Origin: Paraphysomonas bandaiensis
Lineage: Eukaryota; Protista; Chrysophyceae
Length of the DNA stretch: 64,000 bases
Assembly: GCA_965644295.1 (NCBI GenBank)
Contig: CBFFRP010000280.1
Span: forward strand, 124,001 to 188,000
Direction of reading: 5' to 3'
Below the pieces are notes generated by a model. That model was not told where the DNA came from and did no database searches. It saw only the letters and a list, made by a program, of their open reading frames with translations. This document shows positions 2,977 through 13,362 of the stretch, piece by piece (the stretch's first letter is position 1; each line of letters begins with the position of its first letter). Position numbers and translations under genes: made by a program.

Positions 2977-3387
2977 GCATGTCATCATAGATAATATAGA
3001 GAAAAAATACTGGACAGTTGACATTAACGTGGAATATATTAAGTGCTTTAGAAACAACAGTATTCCCTATAAACTAGCTATACACTGTCGAATCGCCAAC
3101 ACCTTCTCTTCGTTACGCATAACAGAATTATATAAGATTATAACTGTAATACGTAATACATACCGCTACATGAATATATCAATCCATGTGTTTGTGTAAG
3201 TTGTTTGGTGTAAACTTTCGTGTGCATGTCATCATAGATAATATAGAGAAAAAATACTGGACAGTTGACATTAACGTGGAATAGATTAAGTGCTTTAGAA
3301 ACAACAGTATTCCCTATAAACTAGCTATACACTGCCGAATCGCCAACACCTTCTCTTCGTTACGCATAACAGAACTATATAAGATTA
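2977..3387. repeat. Direct duplication (~164 bp: 2977-3140 and 3224-3387) of the NACA stop codon and 3' UTR
   Basis: Two near-identical copies of gcatgtcatcatagataatatagag...tatataagatta, 247 bp apart, with a few substitutions. Confidence 0.95.
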
Positions 3388-4044
3388 TGACATGGTCAGT
3401 TCCATGATAGCATTGACAATATCGCTGTCATTGTTCTTGAGAGCCGTAATAGCTTTACTACGGGAGCATCCGATCTGTGCAATGACGAGGTCAATGTCCT
3501 TGGGGTCGACACCCTCCTCACTGACTTCTCCCTCCTCTTCAGCAGCTTCAGCGACAGGAGCGGCAGCGGGTGCGGCAGCCTCAGGAGCCTTGAACTGCTC
3601 CGCAGCCCTGGCATTAGCAGCGGCAGAAAGGTCCTCAACCTTGGCCTCTCCAAAGATAACATAAGTCTCGCTAGTGGGGGACTTGAACACATCCGGCTGA
3701 GCGATGACAAAGAGGATAGTCTTAGACTTCTTGATGGTAACTCTCTGGATGCCAGGGACAGGGCGGAGGCCGAGCTTCTGCATGGCCTTTCTGGACTTCT
3801 TCTCCCCACGGGAGTGCTTCACACCAGCATCACCCTTTACATAGCATACTGTCAAGGCACGCCCACCACATTCTGTCACCTTACCTCAGCACCGGCGTTG
3901 TCACCAGTCTCAGCACCAACCAAATTCGGCACCTCGTCATCGGAGTCATCCTGCAGCCAGAATTATTTGACATATACACGCCATAGAACGTATGCTTACC
4001 GAGCCAACCTCCTCAACTCTAGGATCGTTTTCAAATTCGGTCAT
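3385..4044 (-). CDS. NACA: Nascent polypeptide-associated complex alpha subunit
   Basis: Exons 4044-4000 ([15 protein letters not shown]), 3950-3885 ([10 protein letters not shown]) and 3834-3385 ([16 protein letters not shown]...[38 protein letters not shown]; UBA tail [10 protein letters not shown]). Introns are GT-AG. Confidence 0.97.
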
Positions 4045-4659: not shown

Positions 4660-6155
4660 ATGACATCATCTATGTTCCATCTCATTCTACTGTCACTATT
4701 AGTGCGATACAGTGTAGCGTATACACTCCTCATGAACTGTACGAGTGAAGGCCTCACAGGCACTAACTGCATAAACTATATGCGTAACTACCTTCAAACA
4801 TATGTATTCGATAACCGCACATATAACCCACAGTCTCTACCAGTTGTTAACCCATACTGGCATGAGATGCCCCCTCCTCCAGGAACTGATACAGATCATG
4901 TATCTGTTGACTGTACTGTGACTTTCAATCACCTCATATCTGTAGATATTGTAGAGGGAACGATGTCGGCGTCTGTCTTTTTAGACATGTACTGGACAGA
5001 CGATCTAATTAGTTGGGATTCCAAATGGACAGATGGTGTAGATTTCATGGATATTAGTTCACATCTGCTGTGGATGCCTGATGTACAACTTTATAACGTT
5101 GTAGGATCATTCAGTAACCAAATGGCAAAGCCTGCAGTCTTTCTTTCCAGTAATGGAAATGTTTGGTGGTCAGGGAAAGGAATGATTACATTCGCTTGTA
5201 GTTATGATACTACCGATTTCCCCTTTGACCAGCAAAGATGTTCTGCTCGATTTGCATCGTGGATATATGCTGAGTATCAGATGGATATAAGGAATGTTAC
5301 TGTTACAGTGGATGACGACTTTAAGATATTAGCTTGGGATGTCAGTGAGGTTACTGGAAATAGAGAAGTGTCTAGACAGTGGGATGTGTATGACTTTTCG
5401 TTTGCGGTATACACCATCACTATCGACCGTTATGGAACGCATTACGTCTACACCGCGATTCTTCCTTCCCTCGTGGTAACTTATATTACATTATTGGCGT
5501 TGTGGATCAATGAGGTGACTAGTCGCTTGGCTTTAGCAGTAACGGGTCTACTTACTATAATTGCCGTACAGGTATGGCTAGAACTGTATGTTGGTATGTC
5601 GGATCTCATCTGATATTGCAGTGGACAATATCCGATGAACTACCAGTTTCGGGAAGTACAACTTGGTTGGGGCGTTTCTCAAACCTATGTATGGTATTTG
5701 TTGCTCTTGTGTGCGCAGAATGTTATGTAGCTGGGTACATGGTTACCAAGAAACAAGAGAGAAATGTGCCAAAATGGGTGCGATGTTTAATTCAATTGAG
5801 TGTGTTGCACCGAGTTTTTCTATTTGGCACAAGACCCCAAAACGAAAATGTAGAAGGAATAAATAGTTCCAATATAGAGATACCGAACCTACGAACCAAT
5901 TCTTCACGAGATGCAGCGCCGAAGGAAGGTGAGGAACCGTCGCCTCTGCACAACAATGAGAAAACCGACACGAGTTCCGATAGTTATACCCTTCCGCTAA
6001 GTGCTCATAGCTCTTTTAGTCCACCAACGATAGATGAAAACACTATCACTTGGGAGAGAGGTAGAAGAGCTCTTGATCGAATTTGTCGCATTGTGTTTCC
6101 TGTGACATACACAATTACTCTATTTTCCCTTTTTGCGGAATTGTTTTTCAATTAG
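4660..6155 (+). CDS. Pentameric ligand-gated ion channel subunit, Cys-loop/nicotinic-receptor-like
   Basis: Signal peptide, WTD, WMPDVQLYN, C-x13-C loop CSYDTTDFPFDQQRC, and FASWIY. M1 YTAILPSL, M2 RLALAVTGLLTIIAVQ|WTISDELP across intron 5572-5621, M3, and M4 ALDRICRIVFP. Confidence 0.92.
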
Positions 6156-7041: not shown

Positions 7042-10000
7042 TTATGATAGTAAGAGAGCGCACAATAACGGAACTTTCTCAAATATACGACCTGCGGATA
7101 TAGCTCCAATAGAGTGCTTCACGGCCATCGCAACCACTTCGGCACCCTGAACAAAACTTTGTTCACAGTCAGTTGCCGAATCACAACCCAGTAGATCACA
7201 CAACTCTGACTGTGAATCTATCAAGCAATTTTGTAGAATTTCCGCAATAGAATTCACAACTTGACTCTCAACTTCGTTACCCTTATCTACTAGCAAATCA
7301 AGGGTCCTCCACTGATGCTCCAATAATAGCAACCATAACAAAGATATTGATCGGGTTAAGTGACGTAAATGGCTCTCAATTCCTTGTGACACGACCGCAA
7401 GCGCTAAATCACTGCCAAGGTTTTGTACAGAATTCTCTACTTCCAAAATCACAAATGCATGGACTAGACGCCGCAGCATAGTGGAGACTAGATCAATCCA
7501 GCACACCAAAGCGGTATCCGACTCAGCGCCAGCTACTTTCGCAAGACATATTTCTCTATTATCAAATGATAATTTCTGATTGTGTACAACATCTTGCGCT
7601 CTGTCTATTGTGACCAGACTCAAACTACATTTCATCAAAGCCTCCACAGTATCCAAAGCTCCTTTAAAATAACAATACTGAGTGCACACTTTCGCGGTAT
7701 GATATGCACCCAAAGCGTGTAAGCATTCATCACTCAATACTTCAGCAACTATCTGCATAACGTAGCAGTAATTACCGACACTCAGTGTCTCAGACGTTGC
7801 TCGTTTCTCTACTCGCCCCTCGTCAGGTGCAGTGTCATTGCCACTACTTTCTGATAGTCTGTTGCTATCTATGACGCCATCCTCATCATTTCCACTCTCG
7901 GGCGTAGCTGTATCAATTAAACCAGAATAAACTGACCGAGAATCGATAATAGATACATCAGAATCCAGAGTGGTTCGAGTTCCCGAAGAACCACTCTCAA
8001 TAGAAGACATACGGCTTAACGTTGTAACCATGTAGTTTGAATACAGGTGAAGAGAAACCTCTAAAAGTGCATGAACTGTTGCGCTGGAAGCAGGAATATG
8101 AGAGTCGAATACGATGCCAGCATAGTATACGACCAAGTGAAATTTGGATATGGTACTTAGCGACGACAGATAGCGTTCAGTGCTCTGAATTTCATCCATA
8201 GAAATGCATTGACTTCCACCACTCACGTCCAATATTGCGGTTCGAATGTTCCACGGCTGTATATACGGGAACAAGTTGCAGCATAAAGTAACACATTGAA
8301 ATTCACTGGCACGGCAAATAGCAGTAAGGTTTGCAAGAAAAACGTTCAGGACATTAGGAATTTTGTTCTCCAATACAAAGCTTTGAAAGAGCAGCGAAGC
8401 ATCAGCACTAACAGGCGTATTTTTATTAGACACAGATGAACCACCTTCAACAGCGGAAGACAAAAACGGATTCCGACATCTGAGAACGGCGGGGGCCCTA
8501 CAAGCCAGATCAGTACACTTTGACAGAGGCCCGGAAAATTGGCGAACGCAACATACAATGGCATACACATCAAGGTCAACGTAATTAGCATAAGACTCGA
8601 AAAAGGTGGACACATCAGTGATATCCCACTGGGTTATTGAGCATGATGACAACTGCTGTGCAGGAACAGATATATCGATCGAAAACTGCTTGAATGTATT
8701 TGGAAGGACGTAAAAGTGGCCGCAAAGTCCTGCCTTTATATTACGCCGGCCATTGCATTTTACAATATATGGTAGCACTGTGTGTATGAGAAAGAATACA
8801 GTCACTAGACATGTGACACAGGTTGTGTGCAGTCGAAAAGCATTATCTCCGCTCGAAGCATCAGAACTGAGATGCTTGGTATTGAGCCTGGCTACTCCTT
8901 GTAACTTTTCCCGATTTGCTGGTGATGCTGGAAGCAGCGGTGTGAACGACGTCATCCACACTTTTAACAGCTCGTCTACACCGCTTATAGGATCAATAGT
9001 AGGACATTCAACAAATGATTCTTGTACTAATTTAAATACAATTGCTGTGTACTCTACCTCTGGTAGGTATGAAGCGATAGAAGAATACCCATCTTTGGGT
9101 GATTTAATACCGGCTGGAGATGTCGTCTTGCAGTGCTTGGTACGTAACGACGAAGGTACCGGTGATAAAGACTGTGACTTTCTGTTCATCATTGTCACTC
9201 GAATAGCTTTAGACAGACCTCGAACCTTCCAGTCTCGGTCTGATATCATAAGAACGTCGTTTTCACTGTCATTAGATTTTTTTTGTTCGGACCCGCGAAA
9301 ATTGGCTAGTTTTCGAGTGTTTTCACTTCGTTGTGGTGGCGTACTGATTATATCTAACTTCGACTTCGATGAAACGTCCAATTCGAACTGTACAGTGTCG
9401 GACAAATCATATATTCTGTCCTCACCGTGTGACGAAGGGTCGCTCATTTCCTCATCTTCACTGTTTAAATCATTATCAGGCGGTAAACTCTTGTCGTTAT
9501 TTAACAAATTCAGCCACCTATGCCAACTCAATGACCCTCGGCTCCGCATAAGCGACGAATTTACTGAACTACGAAGTTTCGACTTCAATGTTTTTGATTC
9601 GATTGCATACATATTGAGGACACACCCATCAGTAAAGTCCTCTAGGTAACCAATGCACCGAGAGTGCTGCCTGTTGCCGTGTAAAGCAGCCACAAAAGAA
9701 TCTTTCTGGAGAATAGCCTCCTCTGCCCGTGATTCGCCCATAAGTATTCGAGCCATAAGTTTCTTGTATCTACAATGCGGAGCACCATAGAGATTCCACA
9801 CTTCCTCAGCCACTACTTCCACATTCTTATCCGCATCCACTGGGGCGGTCACACAGTTGCCGACGCAGCACCGTGGGTACATGTGTCTTCACAAGGCAGC
9901 AACATATTATTCGAATTGTACATAAATATTAGAAATTACCTCTGTTTTATACATTCCACTATAACCTCAGGTTCACTCAACAAGAGTCTCGTCCCTCCGA

Positions 10001-13000
10001 CTGATGTTCGCCATGCATAGTTGTCGATATTTCCACTGAGAAGAGCTGAAGCAATATCTAGCATTCCAAACTCGTCGTTTGCGAATTGTAAGTGCTTCGA
10101 TTCCTCATCCATACGCTTGAGAACGTTACTCGTCATTCCAGTCGCAAATAAATCGAACAACGGATTGTTCTTACTGTCCCCATCTTCGGACCCACTACCA
10201 CCATCTTCTTCATCGCATTCCAGCAAGTCATCATCGTTGACTGAATTTCGCCTGCTTCCTACGGTACCACCACTGTCCCGCCATATATGGTCAACTGACA
10301 TAACAAGTGGAGAAGCGCGAATAGGACCACATATAGCATCTCCATACTGAAATGTAAGGACAACATCCTGAAAAAAGGGAAATAAGAAAAAGTAAAATAC
10401 CAGTGGGTCAACCAACCTCGTCACACGGGCGCAGAAAACTCTTCAATATCTCTAGCGCTTCATCTGAAGTCATTCCGATTATTTTGTGTCCATTTATCGC
10501 TATCAACACGTCTCCAATTTCTATCATCCCGCATTGCTTAGCAGGATTCGGGACACCGTAAGGCATTCTGTTAAATGCTTGCACGACGAGACAGTGGTTT
10601 CGTTCTATGCGGAGATTCAACCCGAGTCCATTCTCTCCACACGAAAGAGTGACGCTATAAGTGTTTCGTTCTGGAATGATATCTGGCGTGTCTTCGAGTT
10701 CTGGAGACATCTCAATTATCACAGCCGTTCTTCGGTGTTGCTGCTCCGAAACTGGGCACACTCTCCGAGATCTAATTCTGTTTCGGATTTGACTTAAATC
10801 AGTACCTTCCTCGGCGTCAAGCCATTTATCTGCCCACACTCCATCGGTATTGCGTAGCCATTCTGGGTCTGCATAATCCACATCATCCTCCAACATAACA
10901 TCGCCCTCCTCACAGTCAGATACAGGGCCCCCGTCACACGTTGAGGATAACACGGCCGGAAATGACTCACTATTACTCCTGCACCTTTCTTGTACTATAT
11001 CACCTGCACTACTAATTACATCACTATTCATTCTACTATCACTGGCTGTGGTATCACTACTCCCAACAGGTACTAACTTTGACATATGCAAGTCCGCTTC
11101 CACACCCACAATCTCACCCACTAGGACATCGCTTCTTCCTTTCTCCTCATGAAATCCCGACTCGCTGCCACTTGGCTCTGGGTCACGCGACCCCATGTCA
11201 ACCAGGCATGAGTCACTTCCAAACTGCCGACGGAACAGTCCTGGGGAAGGGGAGCTGACGCTCAGACTTCGCGACCTCACACGGGACGGAATAATCGATG
11301 GGTGTGATTTTTCAAACTCAGACATCATATCTTCTGTTTGATTTATCAAAATAGACACTGTTGCCAGTACTTCAGCGACAGAGGTCTCATTATCTTTGCT
11401 ACTTTGAAATGATCGAGTTCGGCTCAATAATCTGCTGCGAGTCAACTCGTCGTCATCACCAAACACCTTGTTCGGTTGCACCAGTCTCGCACTTTCATCA
11501 TAGCATTGGCGGTCGATAGTATTAAGCAAAATAGCCGACATACTGAGCATATGTTCAGCATCCACCAGAGCCCGTTCATTTTCTCTGATCACCACCTTAA
11601 TTTCGTTGTCATTGTTTTCCGCTTCTGATACATTTGTGCCGCAATGATAACCGCCCCCGCCGACGGCAGCCAAACTTTCTTCTAGTTTCTTCCTTGCTCT
11701 ATCTCCACATCTCGCATCTGATAAGGCTTCCGTCAAGTCCAAAAGACGAAGGAAGTCGTTGTAAAACTGTCGCTTCGATAGCTCCTCGATATCAAAATGA
11801 TCACTAACAAAGATTAACTTATCTACGTCAGAAAGCATGCTCTTGGTTGTGCATACACCATTCATGTCGTGGGGCGCAAAAGATACAATTACATCATCCA
11901 CGTCAAGGTGTTCAGGATTGCTGAATTTTCGAACAGGAGATGTAGGTGCATGCAACACCGGGCTATCTTTATCCATCATTGGAGTGTTCAGGTCAAGACT
12001 AAGGTGCTCTAATTCTGTATCAGTTTCGAGTAAACAACTTTGAAGACTGCTTTCAATCTTATCTATGCGCTGACCCGCAGGGATGTGTTTCAAGGTGTCA
12101 CGTCGAAGCTCATTTCGTTTCTTCCTGCTACTTCGCCATTTTTGCTGCAATATACGAACACTAGACACTAAATTACAGTCAAATATTCGAAAAGGAAGAG
12201 AGAGAGCCATTGCGTTTAACAAAGTTAAGTGGTCTACCATTAGGCCACTCTGACCATGCAAAACCAGCACAGACTGCTTGTATACAGCCACAGCATGAAC
12301 ACTGTGAAATATAGGTAATATTTGATAAGTGTAAGATTCCGTATCAATAACTCCTATTCGTGCATCAGACGTCAGCCCAAGAAGTCCCAGGACAGATCCG
12401 TCGCCAGCACGCAATGGATAGAGACGGCTAAAGGAAGGTGGTACCTTGGAGTTCCCGCAAGCTGAACAGAGCGTGTGTGAGTACGACTTATTCTCCTGCA
12501 AATTACACTGAACTACTTTGCCACCATGCAACGAAAGAAGAATATAATATGGGTTAGGAATAGAGGGCATCGTATCACTAATAGGCAAACGTAATGTAGA
12601 AGGGTAAGTGGCAATAAAGCAGCCATGAATGATATTAGAAGAACCACCTTCAGGGGACGTACGGTCTAAAAAGCCATTTATATTCAGCACTTTCGCTTGA
12701 TTAGACCCCGACCGCATTATACGAAACTGTAATATGCGGTTATCTTGGCAACATACGAGAAGAATGTCTCCAAAAATTTTACTTGCCACACTAAAATGGT
12801 AAGTTATCGTTCCTATTCCACCACCGCAATCACCAACGAATGCTGTACTTGAGCCACCAAACAGCGACGCAGCAAACGCTAATACATCCAACGAAGCTCC
12901 AACAGATAGATTTAATTCTACTAGACGACCCTTTGCACAACCAGAAAACAATTTGCGGGAATCTACGGACCAGCACAGAGCTGTGACAGGGAAGCCTCTG

Positions 13001-13362
13001 TGCTCATGATGCTGATTGATAATTTGAAGACGCTCAAAATTATTCAGCTCAAATACTAAAACTGTTCCTGATACCAATCCGACAGCAATATATCTGAAAC
13101 AAGGACTGAACTTGAGTTGAAAGACTTTAACGTGAAGGCTTCTATCGTTAGCTGGAGGACTCACTTTTCTTTCCATAACAGACTTCAGTCTATCCTCCAC
13201 TTCATATATGCGATAAAACAAGATCGAACCAACTCCTGTTCCAACCGCCACGATGTGGTTAGCTGTGTCCATGCAGCTAGGCTCATCTGTGGGGTGATTT
13301 GGATAAGGTGTATGTGTATTGACCGGTAAAGGGGAAAACACTATACTACCACGATGCAACAT
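7042..13362 (-). CDS. Large HPS5/TECPR2-like WD40 protein with central PDZ domain and helical C-terminus (3 exons: ORFs 10408-13362, 9936-10424, 7042-9882)
   Basis: N-terminal WD40-like motifs (FSPCFRYIAVGLVSGTVLVF; HRGFPVTALCWSVDSRKLFSGCAKG). PDZ signature GENGLGLNL...AKQCGMIEIGDVLIAING. C-terminal LFPYIQPWNI motif resembles HPS5. Short GT-AG introns link the ORFs. Confidence 0.7.

What the first reader, a model, noticed from the sequence alone, without database searches (positions are those of the whole stretch)
4660..6155. True disulfide Cys-loop, nicotinic-receptor-like channel in an apparently unicellular stramenopile
Seen: exact C-x13-C loop (CSYDTTDFPFDQQRC), loop A WMPDVQLYN (Tyr), loop B FASWIY (Trp), four TMs and a long M3-M4 loop. 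Loop C has no vicinal cysteines, and the M1-M2 linker (NEVTSR) matches neither the cationic GEK nor the anionic PAR motif. Established: bacterial and many protist pLGICs lack the disulfide, which is mainly an animal feature. Inference: an intron-bearing, host-integrated receptor with a partial aromatic box and unknown ligand and ion selectivity.
Basis: partly seen in the sequence, partly recalled or inferred. Interest (0 to 1): 0.8.

Follow-up and report, generated by a model that had tools for sequence, protein, structure and literature searches.

The report
Cys-loop receptor channel in a chrysophyte flagellate
A single-celled marine predator (Paraphysomonas, a colourless golden alga) carries and expresses one gene for a true nicotinic-receptor-like Cys-loop ion channel; such receptors were already reported in protists in 2016, but this one belongs to an unnamed, unstudied branch whose pore looks more like that of GABA receptors.

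Summary
Window 4660-6155 (+) is a two-exon gene: exon 1 at 4660-5571, a 50-nt GT-AG intron inside M2, and exon 2 at 5622-6155. It encodes a 481-aa pentameric ligand-gated ion channel with an exact C-x13-C Cys-loop.

A full-length Paraphysomonas transcript ORF (P0200) matches both exons and the junction, so the gene is expressed and belongs to the host, not to a metazoan. It is single-copy. The genome's only other pLGIC is Cys-less.

The protein sits in a well-separated clade of at least 33 sequence clusters. Nearly all are unnamed environmental sequences; one is labelled Ectocarpus fasciculatus. The clade keeps both Cys-loop cysteines, an extra N-terminal Cys pair, 0' Arg and 9' Leu. It never has the -1' Glu of cationic receptors.

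The extracellular domain is most like nicotinic receptors. M1-M3 is most like GABA-A beta subunits.

Most likely it is a homopentameric channel gated by a small amine. Ion selectivity is unresolved, with a lean towards anions.

Cys-loop receptors in protists, including a heterokont, were published in 2016 (PMC4795631). This is therefore a new variant, not a new kind. The scan had not noted it before.

The parts
4660..5571 (+). Exon 1 (aa 1-304): signal peptide, extracellular ligand-binding domain, M1, and M2 up to 15' Gln
   Evidence: ORF. Pfam PF02931 E 2.3e-33. 303/304 identical to transcript ORF P0200.
5572..5621 (+). Phase-0 intron, 50 nt, CAG|GTATGG...TTGCAG|TGG, lying inside M2 between 15' Gln and 16' Trp
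   Evidence: Transcript proteins P0001 and P0200 read ...IIAVQWTISDELP across it. A metagenomic relative has a 107-nt intron at the same site. 17 of 34 clade ORFs run on past this site with a Val (GTN) codon, as expected if they read into a GT donor.
5622..6155 (+). Exon 2 (aa 305-481 plus TAG stop): end of M2, M2-M3 loop, M3, cytoplasmic loop, MA-M4
   Evidence: Pfam PF02932 E 3.2e-9. 177/177 identical to P0200 residues 305-481.
4660..4719 (+). Probable signal peptide (aa 1-20)
   Evidence: Hydrophobic stretch at aa 5-27. Modelled as a low-confidence helix 3-18. Cleavage was not tested.
4738..4770 (+). Clade-specific N-terminal cysteine pair, C27...C37, just before the alpha1 helix; candidate second disulfide
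   Evidence: Cys at both positions in 10 of 10 subclade rows that reach the N-terminus. In the other rows that reach it, 7 of 9 (C27) and 8 of 9 (C37) are Cys. Disulfide formation is inferred.
4972..5001 (+). Loop D region SVFLDMYWTD (F107 on the complementary face; invariant W112 and D114)
   Evidence: Alignment to nAChR alpha6/beta4. F107 position is F or Y in 12 of 14 subclade rows; W112 is 33/33.
5071..5097 (+). Loop A, WMPDVQLYN (Y145)
   Evidence: Aligned to WxPDxxLYN of nAChR. Y145 is 14/14 in the subclade.
5137..5175 (+). Loop E region VFLSSNGNVWWSG (F161, W169, W170)
   Evidence: W169 14/14 and W170 12/14 in the subclade.
5197..5241 (+). Cys-loop C180-x13-C194 with FPFD (F187, P188, F189, D190)
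   Evidence: Sequence. C180, D190 and C194 are invariant in 33/33.
5251..5274 (+). Loop B, FASWIYAE (W201)
   Evidence: Aligned to GSWTYD of nAChR. W201 is 13/14 in the subclade and mostly Phe elsewhere in the clade.
5359..5403 (+). Loop C, NREVSRQWDVYDFSF: no vicinal Cys; aromatics W241, Y244, F246
   Evidence: Alignment to alpha6 puts W241-D242 under the Cys-Cys pair and F246 under the second loop C Tyr. In the subclade W241 is 12/14, Y244 11/14, and position 246 aromatic 14/14. Alignment in this loop is uncertain.
5440..5508 (+). M1 (aa 261-283), with the M1 kink Pro269; pre-M1 Arg257 lies just upstream at nt 5428-5430
   Evidence: Helix 259-282 in both models. R257 and P269 are invariant.
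5509..5526 (+). M1-M2 linker and selectivity filter NEVTSR (E285 -4', T287 -2', S288 -1', R289 0')
   Evidence: Across the clade, -1' is never acidic (0/33), 0' is Arg in 33/33, and -4' is D or E in 26/33. The linker is one residue shorter than in nAChR beta4 and two shorter than in GABA-A beta3.
5524..5639 (+). M2 pore helix RLALAVTGLLTIIAVQ | WTISDE, split by the intron (T295 6', L298 9' gate, A302 13')
   Evidence: Helix 286-308. L298 is invariant; T295 and A302 are at least 90% conserved.
5640..5663 (+). M2-M3 loop LPVSGSTT with invariant Pro312
   Evidence: P312 and W319 invariant in 18 full-length relatives.
5664..5744 (+). M3 (aa 319-345), with the C327...E337...Y339 pattern
   Evidence: Helix 319-346. 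Cys, Glu and Tyr align with the same residues of GABA-A beta3 M3.
5745..6044 (+). Cytoplasmic M3-M4 loop (aa 346-445): conserved VPxW, post-M3 helix 355-371, then a disordered Ser/Asn/Pro-rich stretch
   Evidence: pLDDT below 50 at 374-435. The stretch is variable in length and sequence among relatives.
6045..6149 (+). MA-M4 helix (ITWERGRRALDRICRI + VFPVTYTITLFSLFAELFF)
   Evidence: Continuous helix 448-480. The TWxRGxRALDRIxR motif is conserved in relatives.

Best explanation
The gene encodes a functional subunit of a pentameric ligand-gated ion channel of the Cys-loop type in the phagotrophic chrysophyte Paraphysomonas. It is expressed and single-copy.

It is the only Cys-loop gene in the genome, so it most likely forms homopentamers (inferred).

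Proposed mechanism:
- A small ligand binds at the subunit interfaces in an aromatic pocket. The principal face contributes Y145 (loop A), W201 (loop B) and W241/Y244/F246 (loop C). The complementary face contributes F107 (loop D) and F161/W169 (loop E). The ligand is most probably a protonated or quaternary amine held by cation-pi contacts (inferred).
- Movement passes through the Cys-loop FPFD tip, the D190-R257 pair and the M2-M3 loop Pro312 (inferred by homology).
- This opens the 9' Leu gate (L298).

The pore is not of the nicotinic type. It has Ser at -1' and Arg at 0', and no Glu ring. M1-M3 resembles GABA-A beta subunits. I therefore expect an anion-permeable or weakly selective channel rather than a classic cation channel.

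Rough odds: anion-selective 0.5-0.55, cation-selective 0.3, poorly selective 0.15-0.2.

The physiological output would be a fast change of membrane potential in response to a dissolved chemical cue such as prey, food or conspecific signals, perhaps steering flagellar beat or feeding. That part is speculative.
For: Shown by tool results:
- Gene model and expression: P0200 (481 aa, transcript ORF marked 'type:complete') equals exon 1 (303/304) plus exon 2 (177/177), joined at 304|305.
- Family: Pfam E 2.3e-33 and 3.2e-9. PDB sequence hits are nAChR at 115 bits, then 5-HT3A at 82. The exon 1 model has pLDDT 92, and its best fold match is nAChR alpha7, E 3.7e-21, TM 0.69. The full-length model has four TM helices.
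- Coupling residues are invariant in relatives: C180, D190, C194, R257, P269, R289, L298, P312.
- Pocket aromatics are conserved in the 14-row subclade: Y145 14/14, W201 13/14, W169 14/14, W241 12/14, position 246 aromatic 14/14.
- Pore: -1' is acidic in 0 of 33 and 0' is Arg in 33 of 33.
- M1-M3 alone best matches GABA-A beta3 (E 6.5e-5). No nAChR or 5-HT3 chain appears in the 60 chains listed.
- Single Cys-loop locus in 62.5 Mb.
Against: - No ligand, current or assembly was measured.
- The loop C alignment is uncertain. By the alpha6 alignment the first loop C Tyr is replaced by Arg239, which is not conserved in the clade.
- A ring of acidic residues at -4' (E285; D/E in 26 of 33), and D309/E310 at the outer mouth of this protein, could favour cations.
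- The whole-protein similarity is to cationic receptors.
- The GABA-A-like signal of M1-M3 rests on about 27 bits over hydrophobic helices.
- Co-assembly with the Cys-less paralogue is not excluded.
- Subcellular location is unknown.
Confidence: 0.6

Rival explanations
1. It is a classic excitatory, cation-selective (Na+/K+/Ca2+) nicotinic-type channel. The -4' Glu ring and outer-mouth acids would replace the missing -1' Glu.
For: - Whole-protein and ECD similarity and fold are closest to nAChR, then 5-HT3A.
- -4' is D or E in 26 of 33 clade members.
- This protein has D309/E310 at 20'/21'.
Against: - No member of the clade has an acidic -1' residue (0/33), while 0' Arg is invariant.
- The 20' position is not conserved among relatives.
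- M1-M3 scores best with GABA-A beta subunits, not nAChR.
Confidence: 0.3
2. It is a channel of the same fold that is not gated by an external organic ligand, for example one gated by pH or a metal, or an organellar channel in the food vacuole or contractile vacuole.
For: - The prokaryotic relative GLIC is proton-gated, and no ligand is known for any protist pLGIC (PMC4795631, section 14).
- Location is untested.
Against: The aromatic pocket residues are strongly conserved in the subclade. This points to selection for a defined small-molecule site at the canonical position.
Confidence: 0.08
3. The locus is metazoan contamination, a chimeric contig or a recent transfer from an animal.
For: The closest named and solved homologues are animal nAChRs.
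Against: - An identical spliced transcript is labelled as from a Paraphysomonas culture.
- GC is even at 0.38-0.45 across the 64-kb window.
- The clade is separated from all GE[K/R]-type rows with SH-aLRT 99.
- Identity to animal receptors is only 22-29%.
- The M2 intron site is shared with a relative at 46% identity.
- One relative is in an assembly labelled Ectocarpus fasciculatus.
Confidence: 0.02

Closest known systems
Protist Cys-loop receptors described by Jaiteh, Taly & Henin 2016 (PMC4795631): 'cationic-type' and 'anionic-type' Cys-loop pLGICs of Emiliania, Aureococcus (a heterokont) and ciliates
   Same: - It is a unicellular eukaryote gene with a bona fide C-x13-C loop and the FPxD tip.
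- It keeps the pre-M1 Arg, M1 Pro, M2-M3 Pro, 0' basic residue and 9' Leu.
- Like those receptors, it is known only from sequence, and no biological role is known.
   Different: - That paper reports that its Cys-loop sequences, protist and metazoan, carry either the cationic GE[K/R] or the anionic A[R/K] signature, with one Nematostella exception. This protein has TSR, and its clade has S/T/N/A/V/P/Q at -1'.
- Paraphysomonas and chrysophytes are not mentioned there.
- I could not test whether their sequences fall in this clade. The stored copy of their alignment is truncated, and neither the motif nor the organism names I searched for were found in it.
Animal nicotinic acetylcholine receptors (for example alpha7 homopentamer, alpha6/beta4)
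   Same: - Best sequence match (115 bits) and best fold match (TM 0.69).
- Loop A Tyr, loop B Trp, the WxPD and WxD motifs, and Cys-loop spacing are all shared.
- The cytoplasmic loop ends in an MA helix continuous with M4.
   Different: - Only 22-29% identical, and outside the GE[K/R] clade in the tree.
- No vicinal Cys in loop C, and Phe instead of Trp at the loop D site.
- No -1' Glu, and a linker one residue shorter.
- M1-M3 scores better with GABA-A subunits.
- An extra N-terminal Cys pair.
Anionic Cys-loop receptors (GABA-A beta3, GlyR alpha)
   Same: - The end of M1 reads WIN.
- M2 has 0' Arg followed by xALx[VI]T...LT.
- M3 has a Cys...Glu...Tyr pattern aligned residue for residue with GABA-A beta3.
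- GABA-A beta3 is the best PDB match for residues 255-350 (E 6.5e-5).
- The -1' residue is small and uncharged.
   Different: - The linker is two residues shorter and lacks the Pro-Ala of PAR.
- 13' is Ala, not Thr.
- On exon 1, nAChR beta4 scores 104 bits, GlyR alpha1 scores 62.5 bits, and GABA-A beta3 is not among the 60 listed chains, whose lowest score is 59.7 bits.
Acetylcholine-gated chloride channels of invertebrates (nematode ACC-type receptors, cited via Dent in PMC4795631 section 14)
   Same: They are precedent that an amine ligand can be coupled to an anion pore within the Cys-loop family. That is the combination I lean towards here.
   Different: Those channels belong to the animal anionic clade and have an independently evolved binding site. 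No relationship to them was tested here.

Membership tests
pLGIC / Pro-loop receptor superfamily (Pfam PF02931 + PF02932) | Extracellular beta-sandwich domain and 4-helix membrane domain matching both Pfam models above their gathering scores | tested here: met
   115.9 bits against a cut-off of 26, and 37.9 bits against 28.1. The models show a beta-sandwich plus four TM helices.
pLGIC / Pro-loop receptor superfamily (Pfam PF02931 + PF02932) | Conserved coupling core listed in PMC4795631 Table 1: [F/Y]PxD tip, pre-M1 Arg, M1 Pro, M2-M3 Pro; plus 9' Leu | tested here: met
   F187-P188-F189-D190, R257, P269, P312 and L298 are all present. D190, R257, P269, P312 and L298 are invariant in relatives; P188 is 32/33 and F187 at least 90%.
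pLGIC / Pro-loop receptor superfamily (Pfam PF02931 + PF02932) | Assembles as a pentamer and opens on ligand binding | not testable with these tools
   Only monomer models were possible, and no electrophysiology.
Cys-loop receptors in the strict sense | Two cysteines 13 residues apart flanking the beta6-beta7 loop | tested here: met
   C180 and C194, invariant in 33 of 33.
Cys-loop receptors in the strict sense | The two cysteines form a disulfide | not testable with these tools
   No model coordinates are returned. Inferred from invariance, the signal peptide and the extracellular position.
Cys-loop receptors in the strict sense | Falls inside the eukaryotic Cys-loop clade in a tree that includes Cys-less and prokaryotic pLGICs | tested here: inconclusive
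   The tree held only Cys-loop rows plus one Cys-less paralogue, which sat on a very long branch (3.31).
Nicotinic / cationic-type Cys-loop receptors | GE[K/R] motif with -1' Glu at the cytoplasmic end of M2 | tested here: not met
   The motif is T-S-R here. -1' is acidic in 0 of 33 clade members.
Nicotinic / cationic-type Cys-loop receptors | Groups with animal cationic receptors in a phylogeny | tested here: not met
   The query lies in a 33-row clade (SH-aLRT 99) apart from the 87 rows that hold all 70 GE[K/R]-signature rows (quick ML tree). Whether the two are sister groups was not resolved.
Nicotinic / cationic-type Cys-loop receptors | Aromatic box (loop A Tyr, loop B Trp, two loop C Tyr, loop D Trp); vicinal Cys in loop C for alpha-type subunits | tested here: inconclusive
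   Loop A Tyr and loop B Trp are present. Loop D is Phe. Loop C has W241, Y244 and F246, but no Cys-Cys and an uncertain register.
Anionic-type Cys-loop receptors (GABA-A / GlyR / GluCl) | (P)A[R/K] motif at -2' to 0' | tested here: not met
   The motif is T-S-R and the linker is two residues shorter than in GABA-A beta3. Ala at -1' occurs in only 3 of 33 relatives.
Anionic-type Cys-loop receptors (GABA-A / GlyR / GluCl) | Groups with animal anionic receptors in a phylogeny | not tested
Only similarity ranks are available: M1-M3 is closest to GABA-A beta3, and on exon 1 GlyR alpha1 scores 62.5 bits against 104 bits for nAChR beta4.
Protist Cys-loop receptors of PMC4795631 | Encoded by a unicellular eukaryote and carrying a bona fide Cys-loop | tested here: met
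   Paraphysomonas transcript. C-x13-C present.
Protist Cys-loop receptors of PMC4795631 | Clusters with the published Emiliania, Aureococcus or ciliate sequences | not tested
   Those sequences were not retrievable. Searches of the stored supplement for the motif and for organism names found nothing. The named relatives found here were only Paraphysomonas and Ectocarpus fasciculatus.

The most novel reading that the evidence does not exclude
This clade is a pre-metazoan, homomeric 'hybrid' Cys-loop receptor: a nicotinic-type aromatic amine-binding domain coupled to a GABA-A-type anion pore. It would represent either the state before the cation/anion split of Cys-loop receptors or an ancient ECD/TMD recombination of the kind proposed as a possibility in PMC4795631. 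It would act as a chemosensory inhibitory channel in a free-living predator flagellate.
Probability: 0.2. Interest if true: 0.75.

Novelty: new variant of a known kind. Interest (0 to 1): 0.45.

Why it matters
No Cys-loop receptor from outside animals has a known ligand, ion selectivity or biological role (PMC4795631).

This gene is a practical entry point for four reasons:
- It is expressed.
- It is single-copy, so probably homomeric.
- It comes from a culturable flagellate with a genome.
- It models with high confidence.

Expressing it would test directly two questions. Did fast ligand-gated signalling with a nicotinic-type pocket exist before nervous systems? Which pore type went with it?

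The clade-wide absence of both canonical selectivity motifs, together with an extracellular domain that looks cationic-type and a membrane domain that looks anionic-type, bears on how the two great branches of animal neurotransmitter receptors arose.

If it turns out to be an ordinary cation channel, it is still the first handle on what these receptors do in protists. The finding itself would then be a routine addition to a published inventory.

Tried and rejected
- **Metazoan or chimeric origin:** rejected on the identical spliced Paraphysomonas transcript, even GC, a separate clade and a shared intron site.
- **Pseudogene:** rejected. The ORF is intact, there is a full-length transcript, and the functional residues are conserved.
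- **Exon 2 alone against solved structures:** gave only noise (FtsW, E 0.57). It was informative only as part of P0200.
- **Naming the clade's organisms:** three cluster look-ups and two word-index searches returned only 'Paraphysomonas' and 'Ectocarpus fasciculatus'. Everything else is unnamed metagenome or Logan sequence.
- **Locating the published protist Cys-loop sequences:** the supplement alignment of PMC4795631 is stored truncated, and neither the motif nor the organism names I searched for were found in it.
- **Careful ML tree:** it did not finish in two 300-s runs. I report the quick tree (LG+C20+F+G4 PMSF, SH-aLRT) only.
- **Rows left out of the tree:** P0001 (an identical fragment) and the remaining rows, which did not cover query positions 112-285.
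- **Anionic-type and prokaryotic reference sequences:** none could be brought in by reference. The position of the clade relative to the cation/anion split is therefore untested.
- **Literature:** searches for functional work on protist pLGICs found nothing beyond PMC4795631 and a diatom channel survey, PMC11085791.
- **Joining the exons:** They were searched apart by reference. For whole-protein steps I used the database transcript ORF P0200, which differs by one residue (D51E).
Full report
**What is there.** Window 4660-6155 (+) holds two open frames that join across a 50-nt intron. Exon 1 is 4660-5571 and ends ...GCC GTA CAG. The intron is 5572-5621 (GTATGG...TTGCAG). Exon 2 is 5622-6155 and ends in TAG.

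- Exon 1 (304 aa) matches Pfam Neur_chan_LBD at E 2.3e-33.
- Exon 2 (177 aa) matches Neur_chan_memb at E 3.2e-9. Both are above the curated cut-offs.

**The gene model is confirmed by transcripts.**

- The word-index search returned P0001, a 255-aa fragment labelled MMETSP1103, taxid 36769. That taxid is Paraphysomonas (Chrysophyceae, Stramenopiles). P0001 is 100% identical and reads ...IIAVQWTISDELP... across my junction.
- Its 90% cluster also holds P0200, a 481-aa transcript ORF marked 'type:complete'.
- P0200 equals exon 1 at 303 of 304 positions (D51E) and exon 2 at 177 of 177, joined exactly at 304|305.
- The genome (62.5 Mb, 669 contigs) has this single Cys-loop locus plus one Cys-less pLGIC on another contig.
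- GC is even along the window. The flanking genes are ordinary eukaryotic ones: NAC-alpha and a WD40/PDZ protein.

**Structure.**

- AlphaFold on exon 1, using 33 aligned relatives, gave pLDDT 92 and pTM 0.81.
- Foldseek ranks nAChR alpha7 first (E 3.7e-21, TM 0.69), and the first 50 hits are all nicotinic receptors.
- For the whole chain I folded the database protein P0200 rather than joining exons. It gave pLDDT 82.8.
- The model shows a signal-peptide helix, the alpha1 helix (34-51), the beta-sandwich, M1 (259-282), M2 (286-308), M3 (319-346), a post-M3 helix (355-371), a disordered stretch (374-435) and one long MA-M4 helix (448-480).

**Relatives.**

- The exhaustive representative search found 6591 proteins at E <= 1e-3, but only 33 at E <= 1e-30.
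- I built a quick maximum-likelihood tree of 122 rows. Rows not spanning query positions 112-285 were left out, and so was P0001. The careful search did not finish.
- The query falls in a 14-row subclade (SH-aLRT 100) inside a 33-row clade (SH-aLRT 99). This clade is separate from the 87 rows that hold all 70 GE[K/R]-signature rows. Those rows include some whose motifs match the vertebrate beta-type nAChR chains.
- Only two clade members carry names: the Paraphysomonas transcripts and a partial protein labelled Ectocarpus fasciculatus. All others come from unnamed metagenome or read-archive assemblies.

**What the clade conserves**.

- Invariant residues: W112, D114, C180, D190, C194, R257, Y262, P269, R289 (0'), L298 (9'), P312 and W319.
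- A second cysteine pair (C27...C37) ahead of the alpha1 helix is present in nearly every member that reaches the N-terminus. It is a candidate extra disulfide that I did not see in the animal receptors aligned here.
- The intron site is old. 17 of 34 clade ORFs called on genomic contigs run on from 15' into a Val (GTN) codon followed by unrelated residues. In one relative at 46% identity I found CAG|GTATGG...TAG|TGG, 107 nt, at the same codon boundary.
- The E. fasciculatus copy reads through without an intron.

**Ligand site.** I used the printed alignments to nAChR alpha6 and beta4.

- Y145 takes the loop A Tyr position and W201 the loop B Trp position.
- F107 takes the loop D Trp position.
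- W241-D242 lie under the loop C Cys-Cys pair, and F246 lies under the second loop C Tyr.
- The first loop C Tyr aligns with R239, which is not conserved in the clade.
- In the 14-row subclade the aromatics are strongly kept: Y145 14/14, W201 13/14, W169 14/14, W170 12/14, W241 12/14, Y244 11/14, position 246 aromatic 14/14 and position 107 aromatic 12/14.
- Several of these drift in the wider clade. For example, W201 becomes Phe.
- I read this as a conserved small-molecule pocket in the subclade, most simply for a cationic amine. That is an inference. The register in loop C is uncertain.

**Pore.**

Position -1' is Ser here. Across the clade it is S, T, N, A, V, P or Q, and never Asp or Glu (0/33). 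Position 0' is Arg in 33 of 33, and -4' is Asp or Glu in 26 of 33.
- The linker is one residue shorter than in nAChR beta4 and two shorter than in GABA-A beta3.
- Similarity differs by domain.
  - For exon 1 or the whole protein, nicotinic receptors lead: 104-115 bits. 5-HT3A scores 82 on the whole protein, and GlyR alpha1 scores 62 on exon 1.
  - For residues 255-350 (M1-M3) alone, the best match is GABA-A beta3 (E 6.5e-5, 26.8 bits). Next come a prokaryotic channel (6fl9), GABA-A beta2, beta1 and gamma2, and GLIC. No nicotinic or 5-HT3 chain is among the 60 listed. A 54-aa M1-M2 piece gave the same order, more weakly.
- The alignment shares WIN at the end of M1, R-x-A-L-x-[VI]-T in M2, LP in the M2-M3 loop, and a Cys...Glu...Tyr pattern in M3.
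- So the extracellular half looks cationic-type and the membrane half looks anionic-type.
- With no -1' Glu ring and an invariant 0' Arg, I lean towards an anion-permeable or weakly selective pore (about 0.5-0.55). The -4' acid ring and this protein's D309/E310 keep a cation channel plausible (about 0.3).

**Comparison with what is known.**

- Jaiteh, Taly and Henin (PMC4795631) reported in 2016 that four protist species have bona fide Cys-loop receptors. They noted that Emiliania, Aureococcus (a heterokont) and ciliates carry cationic-type, anionic-type and Cys-less pLGICs.
- They assigned the protist Cys-loop genes to the two types partly by the GE[K/R] or A[R/K] signature.
- They noted that no biological role is known for any unicellular pLGIC, and that ECD/TMD recombination might be detectable as incongruent domain phylogenies.
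- A 2024 survey found only Cys-less pLGICs in diatoms and none in the brown algae it examined (PMC11085791).
- I found no paper on a chrysophyte pLGIC or on functional work with a protist Cys-loop receptor.
- The kind is therefore known. This clade, with neither signature, mixed domain similarity, an extra Cys pair and a conserved M2 intron, appears undescribed.

**Limits.**

- The tree holds no anionic-type or prokaryotic references, because none could be obtained by reference. The clade's position relative to the cation/anion split is open.
- Disulfides, pentamer formation, ligand, selectivity and location are all inferred.
- The taxonomic spread of the clade is largely unknown, because the relatives are unnamed.
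- Earlier notes of this scan on the same genome called the organism a marine single-celled stramenopile. My transcript label agrees.

**Verdict.** The finding is real and of moderate interest. It is not the first Cys-loop receptor in a stramenopile. It is a clean, expressed, probably homomeric representative of an unstudied protist clade with an unusual pore.

Noticed in passing
L002 (G000:C41:170244-173669), minus strand, exons at L002 1963-2388 and 814-1905: This is the genome's only other pLGIC. It is of the Cys-less type: the Pro-loop reads YSKYPSDKQ with no flanking cysteines, and Pfam LBD scores 40 bits. The organism therefore has one Cys-loop and one Cys-less receptor.
   Followed up: partly
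L003 6001-6831 and downstream to about 7450 (NCBI GCA_964200205.2, contig CAXNAF020000041.1, labelled Ectocarpus fasciculatus): This is a member of the same Cys-loop clade (P0020, CAM9137675.1, annotated as partial). The open frame continues past the annotated end, and an MA-M4-like segment lies downstream. There is no intron at the M2 site. A 2024 survey (PMC11085791) found no pLGICs in the brown algae it analysed, so this is either a brown-algal exception or a contaminant contig.
   Followed up: partly
P0004 (read-archive assembly, 4.3-kb contig): This clade member has a Cys-loop tip that reads FKFD instead of FPFD. The proline described as absolutely conserved in the superfamily (PMC4795631) is replaced by Lys. 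It could be a pseudogene, an assembly error or a real exception.
   Followed up: no
window 4810-4812 (codon 51): The genome encodes Asp51 where the transcript ORF P0200 has Glu. This is the only difference in 481 residues, and is presumably an allelic or strain difference.
   Followed up: no
window 7042-9882 (-): A 946-aa open reading frame with no Pfam match at E <= 0.001.
   Followed up: no
window 3385-3879 (-) and 10408-13362 (-): Neighbouring ordinary eukaryotic genes. One is NAC-alpha with a UBA domain. The other is a 984-aa protein with an N-terminal WD40 beta-propeller and a C-terminal PDZ domain.
   Followed up: partly
P0011, P0021, P0025, P0029 and similar hits: Several database proteins of 900-1200 aa contain two to five consecutive Cys-loop ligand-binding domains. 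They are probably fused gene models of tandem receptor genes in animal genomes.
   Followed up: no
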